NCBI GenBank assembly: GCA_965112735.1
Contig: OZ218952.1
Coordinates: 372,001 to 436,000 of the forward strand
Length of the DNA stretch: 64,000 nucleotides
Source of the DNA: Phaeosaccion multiseriatum
Lineage: Eukaryota; Protista; Ochrophyta, other classes
Direction of reading: 5' to 3'
Part shown: positions 1-38,280 of the stretch, piece by piece
Layout of the letters: each line of letters begins with the position of its first letter
Numbering within the stretch: position 1 is the first letter of the stretch
Notes under the pieces: generated by a model
Databases searched by the model: none
The model's input: only the letters and a program-made list of their open reading frames with translations
What the model was told of the DNA's origin: nothing
Made by a program: the position numbers and the translations under genes

Positions 1-3000
1 CACCTCGAGAGCATCAACCCAGAGCTGGACATGGACGGCTTCCCCGTGCAGCTCCCGTCGGTGATGGTGGAGTTGGAGGACGAGGGAGACATGTTGGTGG
101 GGGTGAGCTCATTCGGGGCGGGAGGAACGAATGCACACGTGCTGCTGAGGAGTTATGGGGAGAAGAGTGAGGGTGCGCCAGGCCCTAATCCGGTGCAAGC
201 AGAGACTCCAGTGGCGTTCTTGTTCACTGGGCAGGGTTCGCAGTACGTGGGCATGGGCAGGGAGCTGTACGAGAAGGAGGGCGTGTTCCGCGAGTGCATA
301 CAGCGGTGCAGCGGACTTCTCATGGAGCGGGCCTGGCTAACGGACAAGTCTGTGGTGGAGCTCATGTACCCTACCGCCGCTCAGGACGGGAAGGAGGAGC
401 AGGAGAAGACTGCACAAGCGCTGCTGAAGGAGACACGCTACTGCCAGCCGTGCCTGTTTGTGCTGGAGTATGCCCTCTGTGAGCTGTGGAAGTCGGAGGG
501 CGTGGAGCCTTCCATGGTGATGGGCCACAGCCTGGGCGAGGTAGTGGCGGCGTGCGTAGCCGGCGTCATGTCGCTGGAGGACGGGCTGATGCTGTCCGCC
601 AAGAGAGGAGCCGCCATGCAGGCCTGCCCCGAGGGCGAGGGAGTGATGTTCGCAGTGAGGGCAGGCAAGGAGGCGACTTTGGCAAGCATCGACGCTGCGG
701 GGGGGGCAGGGGAAGTGGTGCTGGCGTCGTCGAATGGACCGAGCGCGAGCGTGATCTCTGGAGCGCGCAGCGGTGTGGACAAGGTGGTGGAGAAGCTCAC
801 GACAGATGGGGTGGGCTGCAAGGCCCTGGAGGTGTCGCACGCCTTCCACTCTCCTCTGATGGAGCCCGCTGTACGTGCGCTGGAGGAGGCTCTGAGGCAG
901 GTGTCATTCAGCGCCCCACGCATTCCCCTGGTGTCCAACGTGACGGGCGAGGTGGTGAAGGCGGAAGAGGTTTCCCAGAAGACGTACTGGGAGCAGCACA
1001 TGCTCTCTCCCGTGCTGTTTGCAGAAGGTATCCACACGCTGGTGGAGCACTTGATGAGGGACAGGAGGGGCTTGAATGTTGTGGAGGTGGGGCCCAATGC
1101 CGTGTTGAGCAGCATGGGAGCCAAGTGCGAGCATCAGGAGGGGCTGGTGTGGGTCTCTACTCTAAATAGAAGACAAAACTCCAACGAGGGGTTTCGAGAG
1201 GCCCTGAGTAAAGTGATTGGCCCGGAGCACGTGGAGCTGTATCGGACGCGCAGACCGTTTCCTTGGTACGATGTCAGGGGTAGTGGCAAGAGGAAGAAGA
1301 GAGGAAAGGGCATTGTCAAAGCTCTTCCCCCAGCGACGGCTTGGGAGGAAAGAGGAGGAGTGAGGCTGTCGGTGGAGCAGCACCCGTACCTTGCAGATCA
1401 CGCAGTCAATGGTGGAGTGGTGTTGCCAGCGGCCGTCATGCTGGCAATTCTCTATGACACGCGCTGCTGCAGCACGTCAGGGGCCGGGGGTGAAGAGGGT
1501 GGTGGTGAGAGGACCATTTGCGACGCGGAGTTCGTTCGCTTCTTCCCAGTGAAGCAGTCCGAGGCTCAAGCTCTCGTAGTGTGCGACAATGGGTCTGGTA
1601 GTGGCAGGAGTGGCAGCGTCTCCCTGTGCAAGCCCGACAAGAAGGAGCTGCCCTACATGACAGCGAAGCTCGTGAGCGACAGCGAGAGCGAGAGCCCTGC
1701 GCAGGTACCTAACGGCGTAGACGTGCTATGGAAGGCTTGCCCAGACACGGTGGATGTCAGTCTGCTGTACGAGGAGCTGGAGCGGCACACGGGCAACCGC
1801 TTCGGCCCTGCCTTCCGGAACATTGTTGAGGCAAAGGTGGGCGACGGCGAGATGGTCGGGCGCGTACGGGTGCAAGGAGTGGCACCGTTTGCTCTCGACC
1901 CCATGGCGCTGGAGAGCTGCTTCCAAATGGCGGGTCTGCTCGACGGCGTCGCAGCGTTTGTGCCCACCAAGCTACGACGCCTTGTTGTGCTAACAGAGGC
2001 TGAGGGGCCGCAATTGCTGTGCCATACAAAGCTCATCGACAGGACTGCCACCAGCATCACCGCGGACGTGGTGACCATGTCCCCTCGAGGAGAGGTGTAT
2101 TGGAGAGTGGACGGACTGGTGCTCATGCAGCTGCCTCAGAGTCCGAATGCATGGCTGAAGCTGAGTGTGTACCACACTGTCTTCGCAGCCCCCGTAGAGT
2201 CTCCGGAGACGCCTCTGCCAGCATCAGCAGCAGCGGCAGCCGTGCCGTCGCGTCGCGTGTGCGTGCTAGGGATGGACAAGGAGACGGAGGAAACCATCGG
2301 CGTGCCGTGTGCTGACCTGGCTGAGGCTGATATCGTGGTTGACGCACGACAGTCCGTCGAGGAGGCTACCGAGCTGCTGCTCAAGTGCGTGGAGGCAAGC
2401 CGTGTTGGGCAAACTCTGAAAGCCCTCGTGTGGCTGGTCGTGCAGGCACCGCACACGCGGCAGGAGAAGGCACAGGAGGAGCAAAGAGCTTCCCCATCTC
2501 TCATGCTGGGATTGACTCGTGCTGCACGCTGCGAGAACCCCTTTCTACCAATCTACTGCTTTCTGCTTCCTCCCGGCATGCAGCTCTCGGTCGGGTGGCA
2601 ACACGTCCTTCCCTACATGCGGATGGAGAGGTTACCTGCAGACAAGGAGTGGCATCTCCTCCCAGGCACCGCTGCTCCCACTACTCACGCGTGGCGTGTG
2701 CCTCGACTGCAGCTGCTACCGAAGGAGCAGGCCGTCACACCGGAGGAACGTGCCGCGCCCGCCTTCCAGCTGCACGTTGACCGCCCCGGGCAGCTGTCCA
2801 GCCTACGCTGGCACGTGCTTCCTCGCTGGCCCTTGCAGGAGGGCGAGGTGCGTCTGGAGATCCACGCCGTTTCGCTGCACTTTAAGGACTTGCTGCTGGC
2901 CATGAGCATGTTGCCTGGGTTCCACCCTGTGCTGGGATTGGAGGCAGCGGGACGTGTCATCGAAGTGGGAGCAGGCGGAGAGGAGAGCATGCCACCGCAC

Positions 3001-4830
3001 TGCATGTACTCGATAGGCGACGAGGTGGTGAGCATGACCATGACCGCAGCCTCCAGTGACGCGCGCTACTCGCTGATGGGCACAGAGGCCATCGCCCCCG
3101 TGTGGAGTCTGCGGCCCAAGCCGGCCAAGCTTAGTATGGTGGATGCTTCTGGCTTCTACGGTGTGACGGTGACGGCCTACTATGCACTCATCGTGAAGGC
3201 CCAGCTGCAGCCCTCCGACACTGTGCTCGTGCACTCCGCAGCGGGCGGTGTAGGGCTGGCTGCGGTCCAGATTGCCAAGCACACCGGCGCCACCATCATC
3301 GCCTCGGCCGGATCCGTAGCAAGGCGCGAGCTGCTGCGAGAGCGCTATGGTGTACAGCACGTGATTGATTCCCGCGCACCCTCCAAGTTCGTCGATGAGA
3401 TTCGACGCGTGACGGGAGGTAGGGGGGTGGACGTGGTGCTGAACAGCATCGCCGGGGAGGGCATGGAGCAGAGCTTGAAGGCCATGGCTCCGCTCGGGCG
3501 CTTCGTGGAGATTGGCAAGCGCGATATTCTAAGCGACAACACGGTGCGCATGGGAGGCCTCAAGGAAAACGTGTCTCTCTTGAGTGTGCACATTGACCTG
3601 CTGACGGAGTCTCACCCGGATGTGGTGCAGCAGCTCGTGTCAGACTGTCAGCAGCTGCTGGAGGAGGGGAAGCTCTCTCCCGTGCCCACGACTGCCTTCG
3701 CCGCAGCCGATGCGACGGAGGCCTTCAAGCTGATGCGCATGGGGTCGCACACAGGCAAGCTCGCCATCGTCATGACGGCGCACGAGGGGGACGAGAAGAG
3801 CACTCCAACTCGCAATGTGCGTATACCTCCCTTTTTGTCCTCCTCTGTTGTGTTTGTCTGTATCCGGCGTTCCGGCGATTATGCTGAATGAGCTTTACTC
3901 ATGTCCCACCACGTCCCATCCTCCCCACCCATGACGCAGGCACGCTTCCTCCCGCAGCTCAGCGCCGACTGGACAGCCCGCTCGTCTCAAATCTTCCACA
4001 GTGCCGAAACGCTGGTAAGATCAGAGATGAGGACGTCAAGGGTAGCACTCACCACACCCTCCGCCAGAGTGGAGCAGTCGGTCATTTGCTCTCTCTCACC
4101 TTTTAACTGTGCGGTCATCTGACGGCCTGCCTTCGCTCCATCTCTCTCTCCCTCTTGTCTCGTATCTCTCCTACGGCTGTACAGGTGGTGGCGGGAGGAG
4201 CGAGTCGGATGGGAATCTCCCTCGTGGAGTGGATGGTGACCAACGGGGCACGACACATCGTCCTGCTGGTGTCAAGGCCAGTGGGCAGTCTCTCCCGCTC
4301 CATACAGCTTCGAGTGGAGAATCTCCGCAAGACCGGCGCTCATCTGCTCGTGCGAAAGTGTGATGTGGCAGACGCGGGGGCCCTTGCCGCGCTCTTCAAG
4401 GGGGCATGTTCGCACCCGCCGCTCACGGGCATTTTCCACTTGTCCTCAGGCCACGAGACCACCACACCTGCCCGTGGGGAAGAAGCGACGTTTCAAATGT
4501 CAGATGTGAAGGCGATAGAGGCCGAGAATCTTCACCGCCTCTCTGCTGCCCCTGAGCACCGAGACCGAGTGCGCTACTTTGTACTCTTCTCGTCTCTGGC
4601 AGCTGCTCACGGCAGCACCAAGCAGGCCGACGATGTGGGGGCACACGCCTCTCTTGGAGCGCTGGCGACGCACCGCCGGGCCATGGGACTCCCTGCCATG
4701 GCCGTCAACCTTCCGTTGGTACTCGGGGCTGGCCTCTACGACGTGAGGCAATTGCGGCAGCGGCGTTCGGACTCGTCGGGCACGGGGCTCAGCGGGGTTG
4801 AGGTTGAGCTCGTCTTTGCACACCTTCGGC
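1..4830 (+). other. PKS module A: KS C-terminus, malonyl-type AT, DH, ER, catalytically dead KR
   Basis: KS end GVSSFGAGGTNAH. AT FTGQGSQ, GHSLGE (523-540), HAFH (838-849). DH DHAVNGGVVLP (His 1399-1401). ER VHSAAGGVGLAA and GRFVEIGKRD. KR has GGASRMG instead of GGxGxxG, and QADDVGAH instead of QANYAAAN. Confidence 0.85.
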
Positions 4831-7800
4831 GTCTGCTCCTGTACAACCAACATCTACCTGCAGAGATGAGCATCGATCGGCCGCTCTTGGACGCATATCG
4901 CAAGGCCAGCTCCAATGAGAGCTTGTACGATCTCGTGGATGAGGAAGGGCGTTTGCAGACACACACACCTATCTCTGCGAGAGAGACGCCTCAAGCACGC
5001 CAGCAGCCCCAGCACACAGGAGCGCAGCAGTTGTTGGAAGCCAGATTGGATGAGGAGAAGGAGCAGCATCGGAAAGTTTTCTCGGAGGGACACGCAAGGC
5101 TTGCTTCTGTAGTCCAGCCCGCTGTGGTGGCCCAAGTTGCCGCCCTGTTGGGAGCGGAGTGGCATGAGGTGGACCCAACGGCCAGCCTGCCCGAGCTCGG
5201 GCTGGACTCCCTGGCGGCGCTGGAGCTGGTGAACTGGGTGGGGGAGGAGTATGGTTTGACACTGTCTCAGAGCGAGCTTCTGGACGGTGCATCAGCGAGC
5301 GATGTTGTCAACACGATCTGCTCAAGCGGAGGAGGGGGCATTGCTACTGTGTCTACACCTTCCAAGCTTTCGACTGTCGCAAAGTCGCCCCGGCAAGGCG
5401 TCAGCTCTCCCGCCAGCTTTGCAGCCAATGCACCCGCCTCGCGTTCTGCCGTGGAGTCCGCTGTGGTGGCCCAAGTTGCCGCCCTATTGGGAGCGGAGTG
5501 GCATGAGGTGGACCCAACGGCCAGCCTGCCCGAGCTTGGGCTGGACTCCCTAGCGGCGCTGGAGCTGGTGAACTGGGTGGGGGAGGAGTACGGTGTGACA
5601 CTGTCTCAGAGCGAGCTTCTGGACGGTGCATCAACGGGCGATGTTGTCAACACGATCTGCTCAGGCGGAGGAGAGGGCGTTGCTACTGTGTCTGCACCTT
5701 CCAAGCTTTCGACAGTCGCGAAGTCACCCCGGCAAGGCGTCAGCTCTCCCGCCAGCTTTGCAGCCAATGCACCCGCCTCGCGTTCTGCCGTGGAGTCCGC
5801 TGTGATGGCCCAAGTTGCCGCCCTATTGGGGGCAGAGGTGCATGAGGTGGACCCAATGGCCAAGCTGCCCGAGCTTGGGCTGGACTCCCTAGCGACGCTG
5901 GAGCTGGTGAACTGGGTGGGGGAGGAGTACGGTGTGACACTGTCTCAGAGCGAGCTTCTGGACGGTGCATCAGCGAGCGATGTTGTCAGCGTGATCACTG
6001 CGGACGGAAGTGCTCGAGAGAGCTACGCTGGAAACGGGTATCAGCGCTCACGACAGCTATCGCTGCGCGCAACTGCAGTGCCTGAGCGAGTGGAGAAGGC
6101 GGCCCCTCTGTCCACACCTCCACCCACTCTCGCTTATACGAGCATTGCTGTGCCGCCCAAGCTGACAGTGGAGAGTACCCAGCGACTTCTGGCCGAGATC
6201 AAGCGCGCAAAGGGCGTGATTGCCTTCAGCGGAGGAAGCGCCACCGAGCCGTTCTGCCTGGGAGCGGATCTCGAGGGTGCGGGGGGCTTTGGTACCGACG
6301 CTATGGCGGAAACGCTAGAGAGCTTCCGACGGCTCCAGGAGGTGCTCAACGCGTACCCTTCTCCGATCATCGTGGTGGTGAACGGCGCGTGCAGAGGAGG
6401 GGGCATGCTCTTCCCCTGCTGCTCGACCGTGTCCATTGCGGATAACGAGAACGCCTCCTTCGCCTTCCCAGAGATCCGCCGAGGGGGGCTGCCCGGCCTG
6501 GTGTCGGTGTCCGCTCAGCTGCGCATGACGAAAGCGCAAGTGACGAGGCTAATGTGCACTGCTGACGTCATCACTGCGGCAAGCGCACTCAACTTGGGGC
6601 TTGTTGATATCGTCACAGCCAATGAGGAGGAGGCGCATGTGGAGATGAAGCGCCTGGTGCAGCGCTTCCGTAGCATTCAACCCGACCTGCTCGAGCGCTG
6701 TGTGACGAAGTATCCATTGACGACCTCGGCGGAAGCAGCAGTGGAGATGGGCCGGTTCATGGCACCTCCTCCTCCCGCGCACGATCCGAAGCTGGTGGAG
6801 GTGTCGTACAGGGGTGAAGGAGGGGGCGTGGCGGTGGTGGAGCTCACCGATCTGCAGCACTTTAATGCTATTTCTCGCAGCCTGTCCTCGGCCCTGTCCT
6901 CGGCCCTGGAGGAGGTGACCAGCAGCAAAAGGGTTCGCGCCGTGGTGCTGCAGGGGCGAGGGCGGCACTTCTGTACCGGAGCCAACCCTGCGGAATTTGC
7001 GGAGTCTCTTAAAACGCTCCCCGTGATGGCAGCTGCCCAGCTCGTCTTCGAGGTGTACGAGCCCTTTGCGCGGCTGTGCGAGCTCAAACTCCCCGTCGTA
7101 TGTGTGAGCCACGGCAAGGTATGAAGATGTTGGGCATCAAGCGGTGTTGGTGGCTCTATTTTTCGCACGTTGTTGTGTTCCTACATCGATTCGCCGTCGC
7201 TGAAACGCCCTCCTCGTTCGCTCCTTACGGTCTCTCTTGTGCACCAGGTGCTTGGAGGAGGGCTCGCCGCAATGCTGAACTCGGACTTCCGTATCGCAGT
7301 GGCGGGGAGCGTCTACAACTACGGAAACCTCCCGCGGGGTGTGTGCCCAGGCCTACTCCTGTCCCGTAACCTCGAGCGCACTGTAGGAGCCCCTGCCGCC
7401 ATGGCGCTGTACCTCCGTGACGATGTGCTGAGCTCCAGCGACGCTCTCTCTGCCGGGCTCGTGCACGAGGTGTGCCCCACCCTACAGGAGGCGCAGGATC
7501 GAGCTCTGGAGCTTGCTGAGACCATTTCCTCCTCTGCAAAGGGCGGTGTGGATCAGACGCTGATGCTCATGAGGCCAGACTTTGATCGGGCTCGCCTGGC
7601 AACGGAATCCCTGGTAAGCGCAACATGATCGCACATCTAGAGCTTCAGTCATCACCTCAGTACATTGCTCTGAGCTCCACGTCCTCCATCTAATCCTCGA
7701 ATGTTTCTCTTGTCACGTGTAGGGCCTCGCCATGTGCGTGACTTCGGGAAATGCGTTTTCGGACTCTTCGCAGTGGAGCTCGACAGCTTTCCAAGAGGCT

Positions 7801-10800
7801 CTTCGTCGAAAGGGTAGGGAGGGGCTGGAGGCTCTGACCGCTCCTACTGCTTTGGTAGCGGAGAGAGGAGGGGCGGACACAGCACCCCCAACACAGCAAC
7901 TCCAGCCGCCAGGCCCCGGCCCACTCACCGCAGAGCCTGCTGTGACAAGCCCACCGCCAGAGCCTTCCACCGCCAGCAAGCCCACACAGCCCCCCTTGGC
8001 TTCAGGGCAGGGAGGGAACCAGAGCCGGAGTAGAAGAGGAGCAGGGGGCAATGTCGGTATCCATGCCATGGAACTGTACGTGCCCAACCTGTCCGTCAAG
8101 CAGACCGACATGGAGGCTTTGTACGAGTGCCCCGGCAAGTTCACCGTCGGCCTGGGGCAGGAGGCGCTGGGCTTCTGCCACCCCTGCGAGGATGCTGTCT
8201 CCATGGCCATGACGGCGCTACACGGACTTCTGACCAAACATGGCGTTCGCTGGCAAGACGTGGGCAGGCTGGAGGTAAGACGGGGCAATGTGTGCTCACA
8301 GTGAGAACAGCCATGCCAGCAGATGATACCGACGGTGTGAGTGAGAGGGTTGTGTAAGAGAATGAGCTTAGTCGATTTCCCCACGCGTGCTCCGCCTGCT
8401 CCTGCTGCTGCTAATCATCGCCCCGACCAGGTTGGCACGGAGTCCTCTGTGGACTACAGCAAGAGCATCAAGACATATTTGATGCAGCTCTTCAACAACG
8501 CCGGGTGCAACGACGTGGAGGGCGTGGACAGCATCAACGCGTGCTATGGCGGGACGGCGGCACTCCTCAACGCCGCGGCTTGGTGCGGCAGCGAAGCCTG
8601 GGACGGGCGCTGGGCGGTAGTACTTGCTTCGGACTGCGCCTTCCTCCGCCCACCGCAAGACTTTTTGAACGGCGCTGCTGCTATCGCCATTTTGGTGGGT
8701 CCAGAGGCGCCAGTGGTGCTGGAGCCCTGCCGAGCGACTCATATGACGCATAGTCACGACTTCTACAAGCCTGCTGGTAGGCCCGACCCCTACCCCTTTT
8801 TCCTTGCCAACGATGGAGGCGTCAGCGTGAAGCTGTACGAGGAGTCGCTCAGGCAGTGCCTCTGTCGCCTGCAGAGAGAGCTCCAGGCGCCGCTCGTTGG
8901 GGATGGCGGCGTGACAGACTACTTCGCCTTCCACTGCACCAGCACGTACCTGTGCAAGCGTGGCTTCAAGGTCCTAACCACGGGGGTGAAGGGACTGGGA
9001 TTCGGTACGTTTGCACGGAATCGTTGTCACAGACAGCACCCCCTTCTTGTCTGTGTGGCACATGCATGTTGTGCTCTACCACTCTCTTACTTGTCGCCCC
9101 ATGCCAATGGCCTGTCTGTTTGTCTGTCTACTTCCTTTCTCATGTGAAACAGAGGCCAAGAAGGCGCTGTACGACGAGCGCTGCGAGCCATCCACCAGAG
9201 TCACCAAGCAGCTGGGGTCCACCTTCGCCGCCTCGGCGTATGTGAGCCTCTACTCGCTGTTCGTTAACGCGGAAGTGGACGGGCTGGACTTGCGAGACAA
9301 GCGCGTGTTGGTGTACTCGTACGGCTCAGGATCGGCCGCTACTCTGTACTCGCTCAAGGTACGGACTCCGCCGGCGATTAAGGGCGGAAGAGGCATGGGC
9401 ATGATGGAGCGGCTGCGCCAGCGAGAGGTGGTGCATCCCGAGGTGATGCAGGCGAGCATGAGGAGGCGCGTGGAGTTGCTGCACAGCGCAGACTACACGC
9501 TCGAGCCGGAGGGACTGCTGCCGGGCACTTTCTTCCTGCAGTCGGTGGATGCTGCGGGAGTGCGGTGCTACGCCCAGTATAGTACACTGGGCGCCGACAG
9601 CCCCATCGTCCCCCTTGAGCAAGTCTCCGTGGCATTAGATGGTGAAGCTGTCATGCCACTTCCTCTGCGGCTGGCACCAGCTGCAGCGCCACCACGTCCC
9701 TCTGCATCGAAGCACATCGCCATTGTGGGCATGGCGTGCCGCTTCCCCGGGGGCGCTGACAGCCCTGAGCGTCTGTGGCAGCTCCTCTGCGAGGGCATCG
9801 ATGCTGTCGGGCCCTTTCCCACAGACCGGTGGGGAGAGGTGGGCAGCGAACAGCACACGTATGCCAGAATGGGAGCGTTCTTAGACGACGCACATCTCTT
9901 CGACTACAGAAAGTACGGGCTCACGCATAGGGAGGCTGAGCACATGGATGTGAACCACCGCATAATGTTGGAGGTTGCGGACGCGGCCATGATCAATGCG
10001 GGTATGGGAGGCGGAGAGTTCTCAGGCACCAGCTCAGAGTCCAAGCACAGTCGCAGCTCCACGGGTGTGTTCGTGGGGTGCAACAACGTCGAGTGGCTTC
10101 TATCCCAATGTATCGAGGGCCAGGGTGAGGGTGCGAAGCTGGGCGTTGCGAGGGTGCCAAAGACAGGGGCCTACACCCTGGTGGGCGGTGCTCCAAGCTT
10201 CGTGGCAAGCCGGCTCAGTTATCACCTCGGTCTCGGAGGGCCCTCTATGGGATTCGACATGGCCTGCTCGTCCTCCTTTGGTGCCATCCACGCGGCCGTA
10301 TCGAGCTTGCGCAGCGGCGAGGTGACTGCTGCAGTGGTGGGCGGTGTCAACATCATGTCCTTGCCTTTCGCATTCGACTGGATGGCCAAGCTGCAGCTAC
10401 TGTCCAAGGTTGGTCGGTGCGCTGCTTACGATATTGCCGGTGATGGCTACGCGAGGGGTGAGGGGTGCGGGGCGGTCGTGCTGAAGCGCTTGGAGGACGC
10501 CGAGGCGAGCGGCGACAACGTGCTCGGGGTCATTCTTGCGTCCGCTCTCACGAACAACGGGTGTCAGGACGAGGAGCAAAGCAGCGGCAGCAGCAGCAAA
10601 AAGGCCAGCATCGCTGCCCCGAATGAAAACGCCCAACGGAAGGCCGTGAAGCAGGCGCTCGCGCAGGCGGGTGTGGCGCCTTCGGAGGTGGGCTTTGTCG
10701 AGGCACATGGTCTGGGCTCACCGATGGGAGACGCCATGGAGCTCCGTGTGTTGCAGAGCGAGCTGCGCAGTAGCGGCACCAGCACTTCATCCACATCATC

Positions 10801-13800
10801 ATCATCAGTGGTGGCGCCTCTGCTCGTGAGTACCACCAAGCCCAACATGGGAAATCTGGAGGGCGCCGGAGGTATGCTGGCGCTGATCAAGACTGTGGTC
10901 GCGCTTCAGCACGGCTTTGTGCCGCCGAATATTCACCTTTACACGCCTCATCCTCGCTTGGAAGTGGACAATGCAGCAATACGGCTGCCCTCTGCTGGCG
11001 CAGGGAACGCTCCCTTTGAGGGGAGTGTGGCGGGCATGCACTGCTATGGCATCTCGGGAGTCAACGCGCATGTTCTAATCCGGAAGGGAGCTGCACAGGT
11101 TGCTCACGTCGAGCGAGGAGAGGAAGACACGAGGATGAAGACAGCTTTCCCATGGCCCGCAGCCCCTTGTACTGAGATGCGTCGTCCTCCGACAGTTCTG
11201 GCCTCGGCGAAAGGTACTTATGAGACGGAGATGGCCTTGAAGCCGCCTCGCGACGAGAGTCAACGCTCAACGACGACAGAAGTGATGGCCATAGCGAGAA
11301 GTTATCTAGGGCAGAATGGGGAGAAGCTGAGGGAAAATACTTCACTGATGGAGGCAGGCCTTGATTCGCTGGCACTGGTAGAGATGCGTGGCCAGCTGCA
11401 GTCTCGCTTTGGGGTGAACGTGTCCAGCGATGTGCTCTTCTCCAATCCGACCGTAGCAGCGGTGGCTGCGTGGGTGGAAGCGGAGGTGCTGGGAGCGGAC
11501 ACAGGACCTCCCACTGTTCGCTCTATTGGCGGTGCAAGCACTCCACGGAACCAAGCCGACTCGACCGCGCAGCTGGCCGTTGTTGGCATGGCGTGCCGCT
11601 TCCCTGGAGGTGCGAACAGCCCCGAGGCCTTCTGGGCCATAATGTCTGCAGGTACGGACTGTATTGGTGCGGCGCCTGTCGACCGCTGGGCAGACGATGG
11701 CAAGCAGAAGCAGTGGCAGGGGGGCTTCATTGACGGAGTGGAGATGTTCGACAACGCCTTCTTTGGCATCTCGGCCGCCGAGGCACAGGCCATGGACCCC
11801 AATCAGCGACTCATGCTGGAGGTGGGATTCGAGGCCCTTCACCAGGCTAGATACGAGAAGGGCACACTACAAGGCAGCAAGACAGGCGTGTTTGTGGGCA
11901 TGTCTGGGAGCGACTGGGGCTTGGTTGTTGCGGATGAGAACAAAGGCGCATATTCCGTGATGGGCACGTCCAACGCAAGTCCTGCCAACCGAATGTCCTC
12001 TGTCCTCGGGCTGAGGGGACCGAGCATAAGTGTAGACACTGCCTGCTCGTCATCATTGGTTGCGCTGGATGCCGCATGCAGCAGCTTGAGACGGGGCAAG
12101 AGCAATCTCGCCGTGGTGGGAGGCGTAAACTTGCTCCTGGGTACCAATGACTTCGAAGCTCTTACAGCGGGGGGATTCCTTTCACCTGACTGGTAAGTAC
12201 ATTGAGTGGGCTTCTCATTTCTCCTGTTTTCTGGCAGGGCATCTCGCGTGGGGGAGGGAACGGCTTGTAGCTATGCACCTGTACGGTTGATACCCCTCTG
12301 TGGATTGCTCACAAATATCCATCTCATTGCCCACTGTCATGCCCTATCCGCGCTATCAGGCGCAGTAAAACCTTCGATGCATCGGCCAATGGCTACGTGC
12401 GGGGTGAGGGCTGTGGTGCCGTTGTGCTGAAGCGACTGGATGATGCCGAGGCCGATGGTGACAACATTCTCGCCGTGGTGAATGGGTCTGCTGTGAACCA
12501 CAACGGCAGGTCCGTGCGCTTTACTGCACCCAACCCACTTGCACAGCAGGAGGTGATAAGAGAGGCTCTTGCGGATGCCGACTTTGATGGCTTGGACGTG
12601 CACTACGTTGAGGCACACGGCACAGGCACCTCTCTGGGCGACCCCATCGAGATGAGTGCTTTGAGGGCCGTATACGGCAAGGGTCGAAAGGAAGCGAGGC
12701 CTCTGGTGGTTGGGGCGGTGAAGACAAATGTCGGGCACCTCGAGGGCGCTTCGGGTATCGCTGGCCTCATCAAGGCAGTGCTTGTCCTTCAGCATGGAGC
12801 TGCCCCGCCCAACCTCAACCTGGACAAGCTGAATCCCGAGCTGCAACTCAAAGACTTTCCAGTGACATTACCTTCTGCCACGGTACCACTGAGTGGCGAG
12901 CGTGGAGAGACGCGCATCGCTGCCGTCAGCTCCTTCGGGGCTGGTGGGGCCAACGCACATGCTGTGCTCAGCAGCTTCGGAGCAGCGATGGTTGACAGAG
13001 GTGAGGCCCTGCCAGAGCCGGCTGAGCAGCACAGACGCATGAGCCCCCCAGTGGCATTCTTGTTTACGGGACAGGGCTCGCAGTACGTGGGTATGGGCAG
13101 AGATCTGTACGAGAAGGAGGGTGTGTTTCGCGAGTGCGTGCAGCGGTGCAGCGGACTTCTCATGGAGAGAACGTGGCTGGACAAATCTGCGGTGGAGCTC
13201 ATGTACCCTAGTGCTGAGGAAGAAAAGAGCGCACAGGCTCTGTTGGAGGAGACACGCTACTGCCAGCCTTGCCTGTTTGTGCTGGAGTACGCCCTCTGTG
13301 AGCTGTGGAAGTCGGAGGGCGTGGAGCCTTCCATGGTGATGGGCCACAGCCTGGGCGAGGTAGTGGCGGCGTGCGTGGCCGGCGTCATGTCGCTGGAGGA
13401 CGGGCTGATGCTGTCCGCCAAGAGAGGAGCCGCCATGGAGGCCTGCCCCGAGGGCGAGGGAGTGATGTTCGCAGTGAGGGCAGGCCGCGTGGCTACGTTG
13501 GCAAGCATCGACGTTGCAGGGGGGGCAGGCGAGGTGGTGCTAGCGTCGTCGAATGGACCGAGCGCGAGCGTGATCTCTGGAGCGCGCAGCGGTGTGGACA
13601 AGGTGGTGGAGAAGCTCACGGCAGATGGGGTGGGCTGCAAGGCCCTGGAGGTGTCGCACGCCTTCCACTCTCCTCTGATGGAGCCCGCTGTACGTGCGCT
13701 GGAGGAGGCTCTGAGGCAGGTGTCATTCAGCGCCCCACGCATTCCCCTGGTGTCCAACGTGACAGGCGAGGTGGTGAAGGCTGAGGAGGTGACGCAGGCG

Positions 13801-16800
13801 GCGTACTGGGTGCAGCACATGCTGTCGCCAGTGCTGTTCGCAGAAGGCATCCACACGCTGGTGGAGCACTGGATGGGAGATGGGAGGGGGGCTGACCTGA
13901 GCATCGTTGAGGTGGGCCCCAACCCTGTGCTGAGCAGCATGGGAGTCAAGTGCGAGCGTCGCGAGGGGCTGGCGTGGATCTCTTCCCTCACGCGCGGGAA
14001 GAGCTCTGAGGATTCGTTTCGAGCAGCCCTGGGCAGAGTAGCGGGGCCGGAGCATCTTGAGCTTTATCCGACTCGCCGATCATTTCCTTGGTACAAGCCT
14101 CCGCTGACCTTTATGCCGAATGGTGAGATGGTCCAGGAGGGAGACGGAATGAGGCTCCCAAGCCCCTTCTCCCCTCATCTCAAGGACCTTCTCAAGGACC
14201 ATGCCGTCAACAATATGGTGATCATTCCGGGGGTGACATACATTGAAGTGGCCGTTGTGGCTGCTCTAGGAGGAAGACAGCTCGGAGTGGAGCAGCAGGT
14301 AGTCCTACAAGGAGCCAGCTTTGTGGTTCCACTGGAGATTGAGGGTTTCCAACAGGCCGGCATGGACCAGGCTCAAAGCCGCCATACAATGGTCTGTGCC
14401 GGGATGAGTGCCCCTTCACGCGGCAGATGGAAGCATGCAGTTCTTCGGAGGTGCCACGGGCGACAAGGGCACCACGGCAACAATGAAGCACGTGTCTGTC
14501 ACAGAGCGAAGCTCGGGGCGTGTTTCTCTGCACGTGGAATCCATTCGAGCTAGAGTTGGCGAGCAGGACGTATCGAGTGAGCTCTACAAGTCATTCGAAG
14601 ACGCCGGCTTCCAGTACGGCCCCCGCTTTCAGCGGACCCGCCACATGTACGGAGGGGACGGAGAGGTTCTGTCGGTCGTGTGTGCCATGGATGAGGAGCT
14701 GTGCGAGCCGTGGGAGATGAAGGGCTTTGCTCTGCACCCCGCAGTGCTGGACAATGCTACCCATACCATCATGCAAGCGCTGCCAAGGAAGCTGCTCAAG
14801 GAGGGGGGGGGATCTCCATTCCTACCTGCAGGCTTTGACGAGGTGGTCGTTTCCGCCTCCATGACGGGAAAGAACGTGTGGGTGCACACGAAGCTGAGTG
14901 AGGGCCAGTCAGTGGCGGACAGCGTCAAGTTTGACATCCGCATTGCAGACTTCGACAGCAAAGAGGTGCTCGTGGAGATGCGGGGCTTCCGCGTGCAGCG
15001 GGCGAGGGGCTTTGTGCGTGTCAGTCCCGTTCGTCGTGCAATGTACGCATTGAAGTGGCAGGCCGCTGAGCCGTCTACACAGGAGGAGGCCCCTGGTAGT
15101 GATACTGACGCTGCTGAGGCGGCGGTGCCACAGAAGTGGCTGGTGGTTATTCCACAGGACGAGAGGGAGGAAGAGATGTCAATCATTGCTGCGGCACGGC
15201 GCTGCGTTCCGGAGAACGTGCACATACACACTCGATATAGGAGGGTGGACGCCTCCGGGGATGATGGTGCTTTTCTTCTTGGACAGGACGAGTGGACTCG
15301 AGTCTTGTACGTGCCGATCTCTGGGGATGGCAAAGAAAACGTAGAAGGGAGTCAGCAAGCACGGGCGGCCTACGCTCTGCTATCGCTACTCAGGAGCATG
15401 TCCACTACGTCGAATGTGCCGCTGACGGTCTTGACGAGCGGCGTCCAAAGCGGCGAGGACTGGCGTCACAGCTGGGTGACTGGGCTGGTGCGGACTGCGA
15501 GGGTGGAGCACCCCTCCATGCAGATTGGTGTGGTGGACCTGATCGACAAGGAGGTCCAAGACAGCGAGGTTGCCTTAGGCTTGGCCTTCCCTGCCACCAC
15601 AGAGGATGTGTGGGTACGCGATAGGCAGTGCTGGACGCCTCAGCTTGTACATCAGTCCCTGCAGCTTCCCTTCGTGCTTGACTTGAAGGCAAGAGGCAGC
15701 ATTGTGAACGCTTTCGCCCTTCGTGATGATGTGGACCATGGCAAACATCAACCCCGTGACCCAGCTGGCAGCTCCGTAGTGGTGGCAGTAAGGGCTGTTG
15801 GCCTTAACTTCCGGGACGTGCTTAATGTGCTGGACATGTACCCTGGCGATCCTGGGGATCCTTGCTCCGAGTTCGCCGGGCAGGTGATCAGTGTAGGAGG
15901 AAGCTCGCGCTTCCGTGTCGGCGATGCAGTGTTTGGCTTTGGCGATGCGGGATGTTTGCGCAGTCATATGACGACGAGTGATGTGTGTCTGGCCGTGATG
16001 CCGGCCGTGCTGAGCTTCGAGCAGGCCGCTGCACTTCCCACCGTGTGCTTGACGGTAGTGAAGGCCTTCCACGACCTCAAGGCTGGAGAGAAGGTGTTGA
16101 TTCATGCCGCATCGGGCGGTGTGGGCCTTGCCGCCGTGCAGTATGCTCAGCGGGTGGGCGCGGAGGTGTACGCTACTGCCGGTGCTGCTGTGAAGCATGA
16201 CTTCCTCCGGAGCTTGGGAGTGCAGCACATTGCGTCTTCAAGAGACGCAGAGGCGTTCAAGCAGTCCATGGGTGAGATGAAGGTGGACGTGGTGCTCAAC
16301 TCACTGGGCGAGGATTACATTCCCTTCTCATTGGACATGCTGACAAAGGGAGGCAGATTCGTGGAGATTGGGAAGAGAGGTGTATGGAGTCACGAGCAGA
16401 TGCACACCGCCCGGTCCGATGTGAGGTACAACCTCGTCGCCGTGGACGCCATTATCGAGTTCGACTTTTCGGCGGGTGAGCCGGGCTGGATAAGCGACGA
16501 GCTGAAGCATCTGGCTGAAGACTGCATGTCTGGCAATGTGAAGCCCTTACCAATCATACCCTTTCACATGAGGGAGGATACTCAGAAGGCCATGGCATTC
16601 ATGAGCCAAGCGAAGCATATCGGCAAGGTGGTGCTGACCAACCCCTCGTATGGTGTGCCAGTGGTGTCCGATGGTACGTACGTCATCAGCGGCGGTCTGG
16701 GGGCTCTTGGTCTCGTGACGGCCCAGCACCTCGCGTCGAGGGGCGCTCGTCACCTTGTGCTGCTGTCGAGGAGTGGGAAGGTCGTCGAGAGCATGACAGA

Positions 16801-19800
16801 ACAGTGGCAGCAGCTTCGAAACGTCGTGGAGCTGACTATCCATACTCCTATTTGCGATGTTGCTGATGCTGAGGCACTTCGGACTTGCCTGGGGGGCGTG
16901 CTGCCTCTGCTGCCCCCTGTGCGCGGCGTGGTGCATGCTGCCGGGGTGCTGGATGATAAGCTACTCGGAGAGCAAACGGTGGAGAGCGTGACGAACGTGT
17001 TCCGACCGAAGGTGCAGGGGGCGGTGAACTTGCACGAGCTTTCGTTGGCTTGGGCAAAGGAGGAGGGACACGCTCCTGGCCTTGACTTTTTCTTTTGCTT
17101 CACATCCATGGCCGGAGTACTGGGTAACGCTGGACAGGCCAACTACGCTGCAGCGAATGCGGCTGTGGACGGGCTGATGCGGCACAGGCGACACCTCGGG
17201 CTCACAGGGACGTCATTGCAGTGGGGGCCGTGGGCTGACGTGGGTATGGCCGCCAAGCTCGATATCGTTCAAAAGCAGTTGGAGATTGCGGGTGTGGGCA
17301 CGGTGTCAGCCGAGCTGGGCATGGCTGCCTTGGATGCCGCTGCGATGTTGTCAACGTCTTCAGGTGATGTGGCCGTCCTGCCTGGGATGGACTGGGGCAA
17401 GTTTGCAGACAGCTTGGGTGCGTCCCGCGGCTCGTTCCTGCTGTCAGGGCTTGTCTCAACAGCAGCAGGCGCGTCCTGGAATACCGAACTCAACAATGAA
17501 GTGCGCGCCTCGCTCTTGAGACTGCCCCCTGGCGAGCGACAGCAATCAGTGCAACTGGCGGTGCTTGATATGGCCAAGGACCTACTTGGAGAGGGTGCCG
17601 ACGAGCTGGACGCGAACACGCCTTTGATGGAAGCTGGTCTTGACTCTTTGTCAACAGTGGAGCTGCGCGGCCAGCTACAGGCTCGCTTCGGGGCCGTTGT
17701 GACCACTGACGTGCTCTTCGCGTATCCCACGGTAGCGGCGCTGGCAGTGCGGATCGAAGCGGAGGTGCTTGGCGGGGTAGAGGAACCCTCTAGCAGTCGC
17801 TCTGCGGTGATCGCGGCTGAAGCGCACCGCACTGACTCAAGGGCGCCGCTGGCCGTCGTCGGAATCGCCTGTCGCTTCCCTGGAGGGGTTAAGAACCCCG
17901 AGAACTTCTGGACTATGCTCTGTGCAGGGACAGACTGTATTGGAGCCAGCCCTGTTGGTCGCTGGGCCGATGAGGGTCAGAAGCAGTGGCACGGGGGCTT
18001 CATTGACGGAGTGGAGATGTTCGACAATGCCTTCTTCGGCATCTCTGCGGCCGAGGCGGGTGCCATGGACCCTCATCAGCGCGTCATGCTGGAGGTGGGG
18101 TACGAGGCGCTGCACAGGGCGGGATACCGCAAGGATACACTACATGGCAGCAACACCGGTGTGTTCGTGGGTATGTCCGGCAGCGAGTGGGGCTCAGTGG
18201 TAGACGATGCGAACAAGGGTGCGTACTCCGTCATGGGCATGTCCAATGCGAGTCCGGCAAATCGGATGTCTTACGTGCTGGGCCTCGGCGGGCCGAGCAT
18301 GAGTGTCGACACGGCGTGCTCGTCGTCTTTGGTGGCATTGGAGGGGGCCTGCAGCAGCTTGCGACTGGGCAAGTGTGACATCGCCTTGGTGGGAGGCGTC
18401 AACTTGCTGCTGGGTACACAACCGTTCGAGACCCTCACCAAAGGAGGTTTCCTGAGTCTTGACTGGTAAGTGTGTGTCTCTTTTGTGTGGGTGGGAGCTT
18501 GTTCTTGGGGCCGCCGTGAGAGACAGATCACAAGGCCCAAGCTGTCTGAAAGGCCCCTGTTGCTGATGGATTACCTCTTGTCTGTTCTTCCCTTTTGCAA
18601 ACCCACAATTCCTCACTGTCAGGCGCTGTAAGGCGTTCGACGCTGCGGCCAACGGTTATGTTCGAGGTGAGGGCTGCGGCGCCGTGGTGCTGAAGCGACT
18701 GGACGATGCACAGGCCAATGGGGACCACATCCTTGCTGTCGTCAATGGCTGCTCTGCGAACCACAACGGGAGAAGTTTGCGCTACACTGCCCCGAGCCCT
18801 TCTGCTCAGCAGCGTCTCATGGAGCAGGCACTGGCGGAGGCCGGCTTGAGCGGTCTGGAGATTGATTACGTGGAGGCGCACGGCACCGGGACTTCTCTCG
18901 GCGACCCCATCGAGATGAGTGCTTTGAGGGCCGTGTACGGCCATGGCCGCAAGGAAGCTCGGCCCCTGGTGGTTGGGGCGGTAAAGACCAATATCGGGCA
19001 TCTAGAGGGTGCGTCCGGAATCGCTGGCCTCATCAAAGCTCTGCTGGTTCTTCAGCATGGATCTGCTCCCCCCAATCTCCACATGAGGAAGCTCAACCCG
19101 GAGCTTCGTTTGGATGGCTTTCCGATGACTTTGCCGTCTGCCGTGGTGCCACTAAGTGCCAGGGACGGGGAGAGGCGCACTGCTGCTGTCAGCTCCTTCG
19201 GCGCGGGAGGAGCCAACGCCCATGCAGTGCTCAGCCGTTTCAGACCGACGATGGTAGAGGAGAGCGCGAGCGAAGCCTTGCTGCAGCTGGATGGACAGCA
19301 AGGCAAGAAGAGTTCACCGGTGACGTTCTTGTTCACAGGACAGGGTTCGCAGTACGTGGGCATGGGCAGGGAGCTGTACGAGAAGGAGGGCGTGTTCCGC
19401 GAGTGCGTGCAGCGGTGCAGTAGGCTGCTCATGGAGCGGGCCTGGCTGAACAAGTCTGTGGTGGAGCTCATGTACCCTGCCGCCGCTGAGGACGGGGAGG
19501 AGGAGGAGGAGACTGCACAAGCTCTGCTGAAGGAGACACGCTACTGCCAGCCGTGTCTGTTTGTGCTGGAGTACGCCCTGTGTGAGCTGTGGAAGTCGGA
19601 GGGCGTGGAGCCTTCCATGGTGATGGGCCACAGCCTGGGCGAGGTAGTGGCGGCGTGCGTGGCCGGCGTCATGTCGCTGGAGGACGGGCTGATGCTGTGC
19701 GCCAAGAGAGGAGCCGCCATGCAGGCCTGCCCCGAGGGCGAGGGAGTGATGTTCGCAGTGAGGGCAGGCAAGGAGGCGACCTTGGCAGGCATCGTGGCTG

Positions 19801-27412: not shown

Positions 27413-38280
<10,868 letters not shown>

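What the first reader, a model, noticed from the sequence alone, without database searches (positions are those of the whole stretch)
4185..4830. KR is dead exactly in the module that feeds the branching cassette
Seen: the catalytic Tyr position is Asp (GAT 4632-4634; QADDVGAH versus QANYAAAN in the other two KRs), and the NADPH loop is GGASRMG. The ER of this module looks intact. Known: HMGS needs an unreduced beta-ketone. Inference: KR loss is functional, and the ER reduces the enoyl product left by ECH1/ECH2 to a saturated beta-methyl (isoprenoid-like) branch. This internal consistency supports a working cassette.
Basis: partly seen in the sequence, partly recalled or inferred. Interest (0 to 1): 0.7.

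Follow-up and report, generated by a model that had tools for sequence, protein, structure and literature searches.

The report
Dead ketoreductase in algal methyl-branching module
One ketoreductase domain of a giant algal polyketide synthase has lost its catalytic residues in the module that carries a built-in methyl-branching unit. This fits known branching chemistry, but related units in bacteria and other protists keep an intact ketoreductase, so the loss belongs to this alga alone.

Summary
GAT 4632-4634 encodes Asp at the catalytic Tyr of the KR domain. The partner Asn is His (4644-4646) and the NADPH loop reads GGASRMG (4194-4214). Lys and Ser remain, and the domain still models as a KR fold.

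All three paralogous branching modules in this genome share the lesion. Of 82 other KRs that could be read at that position, 81 keep Tyr.

The block DH-psiKR-ER-KR-ACP-ECH1-ECH2-HMGS is one evolutionary unit, also found in bacteria (Dyella, Symploca, Myxococcales, Rhodospirillales) and marine eukaryote contigs. All 11 homologous units that have a KR keep Tyr, Asn, Lys and Ser; ten also keep a standard glycine loop and one has the classical-SDR variant.

Units with an intact KR whose start is visible begin or make up a whole synthase. The three units sitting behind other modules have a dead KR (this alga) or none.

The ER is the best-kept domain: 2 of 30 family-invariant positions changed, both conservatively. 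An ER sits beside the cassette in nearly all relatives, including one with no KR. The DH has catalytic Asp changed to Glu.

Best reading: KR is a dead scaffold, and ER saturates the branch. No RNA or product data were available.

The parts
217..1182 (+). AT domain of the branching module, malonyl type (GHSLG 523-537, HAFH 838-849); native algal lineage
   Evidence: Pfam Acyl_transf_1 E 2.6e-50. It is 88% identical to the AT of the window's last module and about 30% to the ATs of the bacterial units.
1351..2160 (+). DH domain. The His motif is intact (1399-1428). The catalytic Asp of the DxxxQ motif is Glu (1912-1914).
   Evidence: Pfam PS-DH / PKS_DH_N. In the alignment with 7 unit relatives, 7 of 19 invariant columns are changed, including D188E. 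The same Glu is present in the C1 and C8 paralogues.
2161..2820 (+). Structural (psi) KR subdomain
   Evidence: It matches only the corresponding stretch of the Dyella and Symploca units (30-33% identity).
2821..3816 (+). ER domain, NADPH motif HSAAGGVG at 3232-3255; looks intact
   Evidence: Pfam ADH_N/ADH_zinc_N. It is 43-48% identical to the ERs of the units and 29-33% to the alga's other ERs. Only 2 of 30 invariant columns are changed (Leu to Ile, Leu to Val). Best PDB matches are the CurK ER and the MAS ER.
3817..4184 (+). Intron (GTGCGT ... pyrimidine tract ... CAG) between the ER and KR exons
   Evidence: Frame and motif continuity. It is 94.3% identical to the C1 paralogue, against about 98% for the flanking exons. 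There is no RNA evidence.
4185..4880 (+). KR catalytic subdomain, reductase-dead (KR0)
   Evidence: Pfam KR E 1.1e-29. AlphaFold2 model pTM 0.80, TM 0.80 to DEBS KR1. It forms a clade with 9 unit KRs at 96/92 support.
4194..4214 (+). Glycine-rich NADPH loop GGASRMG (relatives: GGTGGxG; the C1 paralogue has GGASGMG)
4632..4634 (+). GAT = Asp at the catalytic Tyr position
4644..4646 (+). CAC = His at the Asn position of YxxxN
5109..6011 (+). Three tandem ACPs (Ser codons at 5208, 5547, 5886); presumed acceptors for branching
   Evidence: Pfam PP-binding, 3 stretches; positions. About 45% identical to the unit ACPs, with 0 of 12 invariant columns changed.
6102..7628 (+). ECH1 and ECH2 (crotonase-fold) domains; ECH2 continues in the ORF at 7170-7628
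   Evidence: Pfam ECH_1/ECH_2; 42% identity to P0184 and P0185.
8050..9575 (+). HMGS domain, split by introns; the GTES Glu and NACYGG Cys motifs are present
   Evidence: Pfam HMG_CoA_synt_N/C; alignment; dN/dS about 0.1 between paralogues.
9710..10945 (+). AT-less KS after the HMGS (KSx) with a Cys, His, Asn triad; presumed generator of the acetyl donor
   Evidence: Pfam ketoacyl-synt; alignment.
11282..11476 (+). ACP after KSx; presumed donor ACP
   Evidence: Pfam PP-binding, residues 758-822 of ORF 9011-12196.

Best explanation
The KR at 4185-4880 is a folded but reductase-dead domain. It is kept because, together with its structural half (2161-2820), it forms the frame that holds the ER. 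The module is a chimera. A native algal KS-AT is joined to a block DH-psiKR-ER-KR-ACP-ECH1-ECH2-HMGS, which also exists in bacteria and other marine eukaryotes at the start of a synthase or as a self-contained one. In this alga the block sits inside a multi-module assembly line and works once per chain. KS-AT adds malonate, giving a beta-ketoacyl thioester on one of the three ACPs. KR cannot reduce it. HMGS adds an acetyl unit, supplied by the following KS-ACP pair. ECH1 dehydrates and ECH2 decarboxylates. The intact ER then reduces the resulting enoyl thioester to a saturated beta-methyl branch. Shown here: the lesions, the fold, the shared ancestry of the block, the intact KR in all relatives, and the conservation of the ER. 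Inferred: the order of reactions, the ER substrate, the donor role of KSx-ACP, and the idea that the KR was switched off when an iterative unit became a single-pass module.
For: Tyr to Asp and Asn to His, plus Gly to Ser/Arg in the NADPH loop. All three paralogues share the lesion. Between paralogues KR0 has 10 non-synonymous and 3 synonymous changes (dN/dS about 1.2), against about 0.1 for HMGS (Fisher p = 0.009). One of these changes is Gly to Arg in the NADPH loop, which argues that cofactor binding is not under selection. The KR fold is retained, and 22 of 27 family-invariant columns are kept; the five losses include the catalytic Tyr and Asn and residues flanking the active-site motifs. 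The ER has 2 of 30 invariant columns changed, both conservatively, and the ACPs 0 of 12. ER, psiKR, KR, ACP, ECH and HMGS are all closer to the bacterial and TARA units than to the alga's own domains. The KR tree supports this at 96/92. Units with an intact KR whose start is visible have the KS at the protein's start (L089, L094, L088; L007-L010 show no PKS domain upstream). The embedded units have no KR (L090, L095) or a dead one (this alga). An ER without KR or DH sits next to the cassette in L090. Apratoxin is a published precedent for a KR-less module, cassette and ER giving a saturated methyl (PMC3075265). Only 1 of 82 readable non-cassette KRs in the genome lacks Tyr, so a dead KR here is unlikely to be coincidence.
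Against: Eleven homologous units carry an apparently active KR next to the same cassette, so a live KR is compatible with the unit in some mode of use. Lesion and cassette are therefore not linked by necessity. The three algal copies are 96.5-97% identical over the aligned DNA and count as one evolutionary event. The paralogue dN/dS rests on 13 substitutions, and against the rest of the unit the difference is not significant (p = 0.08). KR0 as a whole has not diverged faster than the Tyr-bearing KR of the eukaryotic contig L007. The ER shows no special affinity to the known cassette-linked ERs CurF and JamJ. KSx keeps its Cys, unlike bacterial decarboxylating KS domains, so it might be an extending KS. 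There is no RNA, protein or product evidence.
Confidence: 0.6

Rival explanations
1. Neutral decay. In this lineage the KR was already bypassed, because HMGS captures the beta-keto intermediate first. The Tyr to Asp change is then a harmless consequence of disuse and not something that makes branching possible.
For: Relatives work, presumably, with an intact KR beside the cassette. KR0 evolves at dN/dS about 1.2 between paralogues, and one lineage has since added Gly to Arg in the NADPH loop. The DH also shows drift: 7 of 19 invariant columns changed.
Against: Two of the four catalytic residues are hit while 22 of 27 invariant positions are kept. Only 1 of 82 readable other KRs in the genome lacks Tyr. 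Sequence alone cannot separate selected loss from tolerated loss.
Confidence: 0.2
2. The cassette acts on a different carrier. KSx (Cys present) is a true extending KS, and HMGS branches the beta-keto chain on the ACP that follows it. In that case the dead KR leaves a plain ketone, or has some other meaning, in the preceding module.
For: KSx keeps the active-site Cys and the first His. An ACP follows it. In the Thiosymbion locus L095 the only ACP detected in the branching protein lies after HMGS.
Against: The three tandem ACPs lie directly upstream of ECH1. They are the ACPs conserved with the unit relatives at about 45% identity, and in the stand-alone units those are the only carriers present. 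KSx-ACP has no AT. The ER would then have no evident substrate, yet it is strongly conserved.
Confidence: 0.1
3. The module, or the whole gene family, is degenerating and makes no branched product. The KR and DH lesions are early pseudogenisation.
For: Lesions in two domains. No expression data.
Against: Long open exons are kept in three paralogues. HMGS dN/dS is about 0.1 and ECH1 0.09-0.57. The ER and ACP invariants are kept. Exons are more conserved than the adjacent intron.
Confidence: 0.05
4. KR0 has a new catalytic role that uses the new Asp and His, for example double-bond isomerisation of the ECH2 product, and is not merely a scaffold.
For: Both substitutions are fixed in all three paralogues, and they create an Asp/His pair in the old active site.
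Against: dN/dS is near 1. The model has low confidence around the site, with the 141-150 block at pLDDT 65. No relative has this pair.
Confidence: 0.04

Closest known systems
Reductase-inactive KR domains of modular PKS (KR0; C1-type in Keatinge-Clay's scheme; from my own knowledge)
   Same: The KR fold and the structural subdomain are kept. The catalytic Tyr is lost and the NADPH motif is damaged. The domain is retained inside a module.
   Different: Here the dead KR flanks an intact, apparently working ER. It belongs to a KR lineage that travels with an HMGS cassette. The AT is malonyl-specific, so an epimerase role is irrelevant.
Apratoxin, curacin and jamaicamide beta-branching in cyanobacteria (AprB-AprG; PMC3075265)
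   Same: A module without KR activity and with tandem ACPs feeds ACP/KS/HMGS/ECH1/ECH2. An ER then saturates the branch to a pendant methyl.
   Different: In those pathways the branching module has no KR at all, the cassette enzymes are mostly separate proteins, and the ER is fused after ECH2. Here everything is in one polypeptide, the ER sits in the normal DH-ER-KR position upstream of the ACPs, and the donor KS has Cys-His-Asn and not the Cys-to-Ser form.
Uncharacterised synthases KS-AT-DH-ER-KR-ACP-ECH1-ECH2-(R)-HMGS in Dyella (L089), Rhodospirillales (L094), Symploca (L088), Myxococcales (L091) and marine eukaryote contigs (L007)
   Same: The DH-to-HMGS block is colinear and homologous (ER 46-51%, HMGS 51-61%, ECH 37-48%, KR 33-39% identity).
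   Different: Those units start or constitute the synthase and keep the KR catalytic tetrad and the DH Asp. The alga's unit is embedded behind other modules, uses a native KS-AT, has three ACPs plus a trailing KS-ACP, and has a dead KR.

Membership tests
Reductase-inactive KR (KR0) of modular PKS | KR/SDR fold retained | tested here: met
   Pfam KR E 1.1e-29; AlphaFold2 pTM 0.80; Foldseek TM 0.80 to DEBS KR1.
Reductase-inactive KR (KR0) of modular PKS | Loss of the catalytic Tyr and/or the NADPH-binding motif | tested here: met
   Tyr to Asp, Asn to His, GGASRMG.
Reductase-inactive KR (KR0) of modular PKS | No reductase activity; no NADPH binding | not testable with these tools
   This needs a biochemical assay.
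HMGS (HCS) beta-branching cassette | HMGS with the catalytic Glu and Cys motifs, plus ECH1 and ECH2 | tested here: met
   Pfam; GTES and NACYGG motifs.
HMGS (HCS) beta-branching cassette | Tandem acceptor ACPs directly before the cassette | tested here: met
   Three PP-binding stretches, 5109-6011.
HMGS (HCS) beta-branching cassette | Decarboxylating KS with Cys-to-Ser, plus a donor ACP | tested here: not met
   KSx keeps Cys, and its second His is Asn. An ACP does follow it. A donor role is possible but unproven.
HMGS (HCS) beta-branching cassette | The acceptor module delivers an unreduced beta-ketone | tested here: met
   The only KR of the module lacks Tyr and Asn. This is inferred from sequence, not assayed.
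Cassette-linked ER (AprG / CurF / JamJ type) | An ER with an intact NADPH site, physically linked to the cassette | tested here: met
   HSAAGGVG at 3232-3255; 2 of 30 invariant columns changed. An ER lies next to the cassette in the complete units and several partial contigs.
Cassette-linked ER (AprG / CurF / JamJ type) | Sequence kinship with the CurF/JamJ ERs and fusion directly after ECH2 | tested here: not met
   The best PDB hit is the CurK ER (155 bits), against CurF/JamJ at 128 bits. The ER lies upstream of the ACPs, not after ECH2.
Self-contained KS-AT-DH-ER-KR-ACP-ECH-ECH-HMGS synthase family | Colinear homologous block from DH to HMGS | tested here: met
Self-contained KS-AT-DH-ER-KR-ACP-ECH-ECH-HMGS synthase family | KR catalytic tetrad and DH His/Asp intact | tested here: not met
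   Alga: Tyr to Asp, Asn to His, and DH Asp to Glu. All relatives are intact.
Self-contained KS-AT-DH-ER-KR-ACP-ECH-ECH-HMGS synthase family | The unit's own KS-AT at the protein's N-terminus (initiating or stand-alone) | tested here: not met
   The alga's AT is 88% identical to its own other ATs. A loader and a full module lie upstream.

The most novel reading that the evidence does not exclude
The alga took a self-contained, probably iterative branching synthase that is also found in bacteria. It grafted the DH-to-HMGS part onto a native KS-AT inside an assembly line. It then turned the unit into a single-pass beta-methylation module through single-base changes that kill the KR (TAY to GAT, AAY to CAC) and perhaps weaken the DH. 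That would be a natural, datable example of module reprogramming by point mutation. A second KR with Tyr to Asn, and a reported DH with its His lost, suggest the same habit elsewhere in this genome.
Probability: 0.35. Interest if true: 0.55.

Novelty: new member of a known kind. Interest (0 to 1): 0.35.

Why it matters
Predicting products of the very large, uncharacterised polyketide synthases of algae depends on knowing which reducing domains actually work. This case gives a firm call for one module: KR off, ER on, methyl branch saturated. It also shows that the comparison set matters. This KR is not a sister of the neighbouring KRs. It came with the branching unit, whose other members keep a live KR. 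That sets up a concrete question for enzymology: what does the KR do in the stand-alone Dyella and Rhodospirillales synthases, and is switching it off what makes the unit usable as an ordinary module? As a finding on its own it is expected PKS logic and not a surprise.

Tried and rejected
(1) The exhaustive representative search with KR0 returned only long multi-KR proteins at no more than 40% identity, ranked by summed scores. It gave no orthologue and was of no use for the lesion question.

(2) The word search with the whole KR0-ACP-ECH exon found no protein combining KR, ACP and ECH. Only the search restricted to the ECH region found relatives, P0184 and P0185.

(4) Faster overall divergence of KR0 is rejected as evidence of decay. 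Its branch length and identity to relatives match those of the Tyr-bearing KR of L007.

(5) An apparent loss of an invariant HMGS Glu ('E5Q') is rejected. It is intron sequence translated at an exon edge, and the GTES motif is intact.

(6) An alternative, more upstream splice acceptor for the KR exon is rejected. There is no AG in the pyrimidine tract before 4183-4184.

(7) Kinship of the ER with the CurF/JamJ cassette ERs is not supported.

(8) Literature searches for the fused cassette in algae, or for dead KRs in branching modules, found nothing specific.

(9) One KR hit (C2:521790) was not fetched. L200 could not be read at the Tyr position.

Full report
WHAT IS THERE

The window (G000:C3:372001-436000) comes from a 67-Mb, intron-bearing algal genome. 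Bases 1 to about 26600 are part of one giant modular type I PKS gene on the + strand. Pfam scans of the open exons and of the DNA upstream give this order:
- a loader;
- a fully reducing module;
- then, upstream and into the window: KS | AT-DH-psiKR-ER (31-3816) | intron 3817-4184 | KR-ACP-ACP-ACP-ECH1-ECH2 (4185-7628) | HMGS (8050-9575) | an AT-less KS plus ACP (9710-11476);
- two near-identical fully reducing modules;
- a hexapeptide-repeat terminal domain.

THE OBSERVATION

The DNA reads AAG CAG GCC GAC GAT GTG, with GAT at 4632-4634. Alignment to DEBS KR1 (2fr0/6w7s) and to the other KRs puts this Asp on the catalytic Tyr. Other features of the domain:
- The Asn four residues later is His (4644-4646).
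- The NADPH loop is GGASRMG (4194-4214).
- The catalytic Lys (4509-4511) and Ser (4593-4595) are kept.
- The Pfam match covers almost the whole KR profile.
- An AlphaFold2 model has pTM 0.80, and its best structural match is DEBS KR1 at TM 0.80.

So this is a folded KR that has lost two of its four catalytic residues. In PKS KRs the Tyr is the proton donor, and its removal abolishes reduction (my own knowledge of the family, not tested here).

IS IT MORE THAN CHANCE?

The genome holds at least 87 KR matches. I fetched 80 of them and added the three others in this gene. Of these 83:
- 79 show the full GGxGxxG/K/S/Y/N signature.
- Two partial ones show K/S/Y/N.
- One could not be read at the Tyr position.
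- One (L195, C15:243092-243640) has Tyr to Asn relative to close paralogues.

The genome has exactly three cassette-type HMGS domains plus one housekeeping HMGS. Each cassette is preceded by a copy of this KR with the same QADDVGAH. The three loci are 96.5-97% identical over the aligned 10-17 kb of DNA, so they represent one event, not three.

WHERE THE KR COMES FROM

A search restricted to the ECH region found two relatives. An alignment of these (A3) was then used to scan metagenome and genome collections.

Domain mapping by tblastn and Pfam shows the same colinear block, KS-AT-DH-ER-KR-ACP(1-2)-ECH1-ECH2-(thioester reductase)-HMGS, in:
- Dyella sp. (L089, a single 3217-residue ORF followed by a reductase gene);
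- a Rhodospirillales MAG (L094, a single 3581-residue ORF with the reductase inserted before HMGS);
- Symploca (L088, where it opens a PKS-NRPS line);
- a Myxococcales MAG (L091, a partial contig that starts within the ER);
- several metagenome contigs (L008-L010, L013);
- intron-bearing marine eukaryote contigs (L007 from TARA, L016, L017).

The alga's ER, psiKR, KR, ACP, ECH and HMGS are each closer to these units than to the alga's own domains. For example, the ER is 43-48% identical to the unit ERs against 29-33% to the alga's other ERs. KR0 scores about 100 bits against the unit KRs and 48-65 bits against the alga's own. The AT, in contrast, is 88% identical to the alga's other ATs.

A maximum-likelihood tree places KR0 with nine unit KRs at 96/92 support, apart from the alga's ordinary KRs and from bacterial reference KRs. 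The module is therefore a chimera: a native KS-AT joined to a shared DH-to-HMGS unit. The proper comparison for this KR is the unit lineage, not 'the other two KRs' of the gene.

In all eleven relatives that have a KR between the ER and the ACP, the Tyr, the Asn, the Lys and the Ser are intact (QAxYVxAN or similar). Ten also have the standard GGxGxxG loop; L007 has GGTAGIG, the classical-SDR glycine pattern. These are L007, L008, L009, L010, L013, L016, L017, L088, L089, L091 and L094. L008, L009 and L088 are close to one another. Tyr is thus ancestral, and Asp is derived in this alga.

I compared columns that are invariant in the relatives with the alga's sequence:

| Domain | Invariant columns | Changed in the alga | Notes |
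|---|---|---|---|
| KR | 27 | 5 | A87S, N144S, Y150D, N154H, D175N; includes the catalytic Tyr and Asn |
| DH | 19 | 7 | includes the catalytic Asp of LLDGxFQ, now Glu at 1912-1914 |
| ER | 30 | 2 | Leu to Ile, Leu to Val |
| ACP | 12 | 0 | |
| ECH1 | 52 | 7 | |
| ECH2 | 21 | 3 | |
| HMGS | about 44 | about 6 | one intron artefact removed |

KR and DH together have lost more invariant positions than the rest of the unit (Fisher p = 0.018). The DH change is conservative. FabZ-type dehydratases use Glu (my own knowledge), so I do not call the DH dead.

Overall, KR0 is no more diverged than the Tyr-bearing KR of L007. Its scaffold has therefore been kept.

Between the window copy and the C1 paralogue, KR0 has 10 non-synonymous and 3 synonymous changes (dN/dS about 1.2), against about 0.1 for HMGS (Fisher p = 0.009). 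Against the rest of the unit the difference is not significant (p = 0.08). One of the non-synonymous differences is Gly (C1) versus Arg (window and C8) inside the NADPH loop. The counts are small.

A PATTERN THAT EXPLAINS BOTH STATES

Wherever the unit has an intact KR and its start is visible, its KS sits at the start of the protein or no PKS domain lies in the roughly 3 kb upstream (L089, L094, L088, L007-L010). These units initiate or constitute the whole synthase, some with their own reductive release domain. They must self-prime and probably iterate. In that mode KR, DH and ER would serve ordinary reducing rounds beside the branching round. This is inference.

The three cases where the cassette sits behind other modules have no working KR:
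- Dyella jejuensis L090: AprA-like loader-KS-ACP-ER-ACP-ECH1-ECH2-HMGS, with an ER but no KR or DH.
- The Thiosymbion locus L095: A-ACP-ACP | KS-AT-ECH1-ECH2-HMGS-ACP, with no KR or ER.
- This alga, with a dead KR.

An ER next to the cassette is present in all the complete units and several partial eukaryotic contigs. Apratoxin gives a published precedent for a KR-less tandem-ACP module, then ACP/KS/HMGS/ECH1/ECH2, then an ER, yielding a saturated pendant methyl (PMC3075265).

MECHANISM PROPOSED

1. KS-AT (malonyl-type, HAFH at 838-849) extends the chain.
2. The beta-ketoacyl-ACP is not reduced.
3. HMGS condenses it with acetyl-ACP, made by the trailing KS-ACP. That KS has Cys, His and Asn, not the bacterial Cys-to-Ser, so this step is the least certain.
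4. ECH1 dehydrates and ECH2 decarboxylates.
5. The ER saturates the branch.

KR0 and psiKR stay as the frame around the ER. Shown: the lesions, the fold, the ancestry and the conservation pattern. Inferred: the reaction order, the ER substrate, the donor identity, and the transition from iterative to single-pass use.

COMPARISON WITH WHAT IS KNOWN

The system works like the cyanobacterial cassette-plus-ER systems, and the domain works like the KR0 domains of modular PKS. It is not a member of the CurF/JamJ ER group. Its donor KS does not meet the Cys-to-Ser criterion. It differs from its own family of self-contained synthases in the features that define them: a live KR, its own KS-AT and an initiating position.

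LIMITS

No product is known. The three algal copies are one event. No close algal orthologue exists in the searched collections.

VERDICT

This is expected PKS logic in a new setting. The useful correction is that the lesion is lineage-specific and that the KR belongs to the imported branching unit.

Noticed in passing
G000:C15:243092-243640 (minus strand; locus L195): A second, independent KR with the catalytic Tyr replaced, here by Asn (NQSANAGAN against NQSAYAGAN in close paralogues L179 and L186). Its NADPH loop is intact and no HMGS cassette is nearby.
   Followed up: partly
window 4206-4208, versus L005 (C1 paralogue): The NADPH loop differs among paralogues. The window and C8 copies have GGASRMG. 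The C1 copy has GGASGMG, which still fits the classical SDR glycine pattern. The Gly to Arg change came after the Tyr to Asp change.
   Followed up: yes
L089:3170-14031 (Dyella sp.); L094:3341-14086 (Rhodospirillales MAG): Self-contained single-protein synthases KS-AT-DH-ER-KR-ACP-ECH1-ECH2-(thioester reductase)-HMGS, flanked in Dyella by unrelated sugar-hydrolase genes. I found no paper on them. They may build their own branched starter and iterate, releasing an aldehyde or alcohol.
   Followed up: partly
L090:3755-12733 (Dyella jejuensis): One protein combines an AprA-type loader (AprA_N, winged helix, MT2-like domain) with KS-ACP-ER-ACP-ECH1-ECH2-HMGS. There is an ER next to the cassette but no KR or DH.
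   Followed up: partly
window 9710-10945: The AT-less KS after the HMGS has Cys and the first His, but Asn in place of the second His (NMGN). Bacterial cassette KS domains have Cys-to-Ser instead. A similar KS follows the HMGS on marine contig L022.
   Followed up: partly
window 1912-1914: The DH of the branching module has Glu where all seven relatives have the catalytic Asp (ALESCFQ against LLDGxFQ). The same Glu is present in all three paralogues.
   Followed up: yes
L016:4409-10837: A eukaryote-like metagenome contig carries a class I/II aminotransferase domain inserted between ECH2 and HMGS of the same kind of unit.
   Followed up: no
L095:14687-16153 (Ca. Thiosymbion): An IS66-family transposase gene lies between the branching protein and the next psiKR-KR-ACP piece of the PKS.
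   Followed up: no
window 28001-30000, 32001-36000 and 40001-42000: Strong strand-composition skews: GC skew 0.62 and AT skew 0.61 at 28-30 kb, and GC skew -0.45 with AT skew -0.44 at 40-42 kb. These lie downstream of the PKS gene.
   Followed up: no
window 12397-26624: The last two modules are near-identical duplicates (their KR stretches differ at only a few positions). Comparisons that use them count as one data point.
   Followed up: partly
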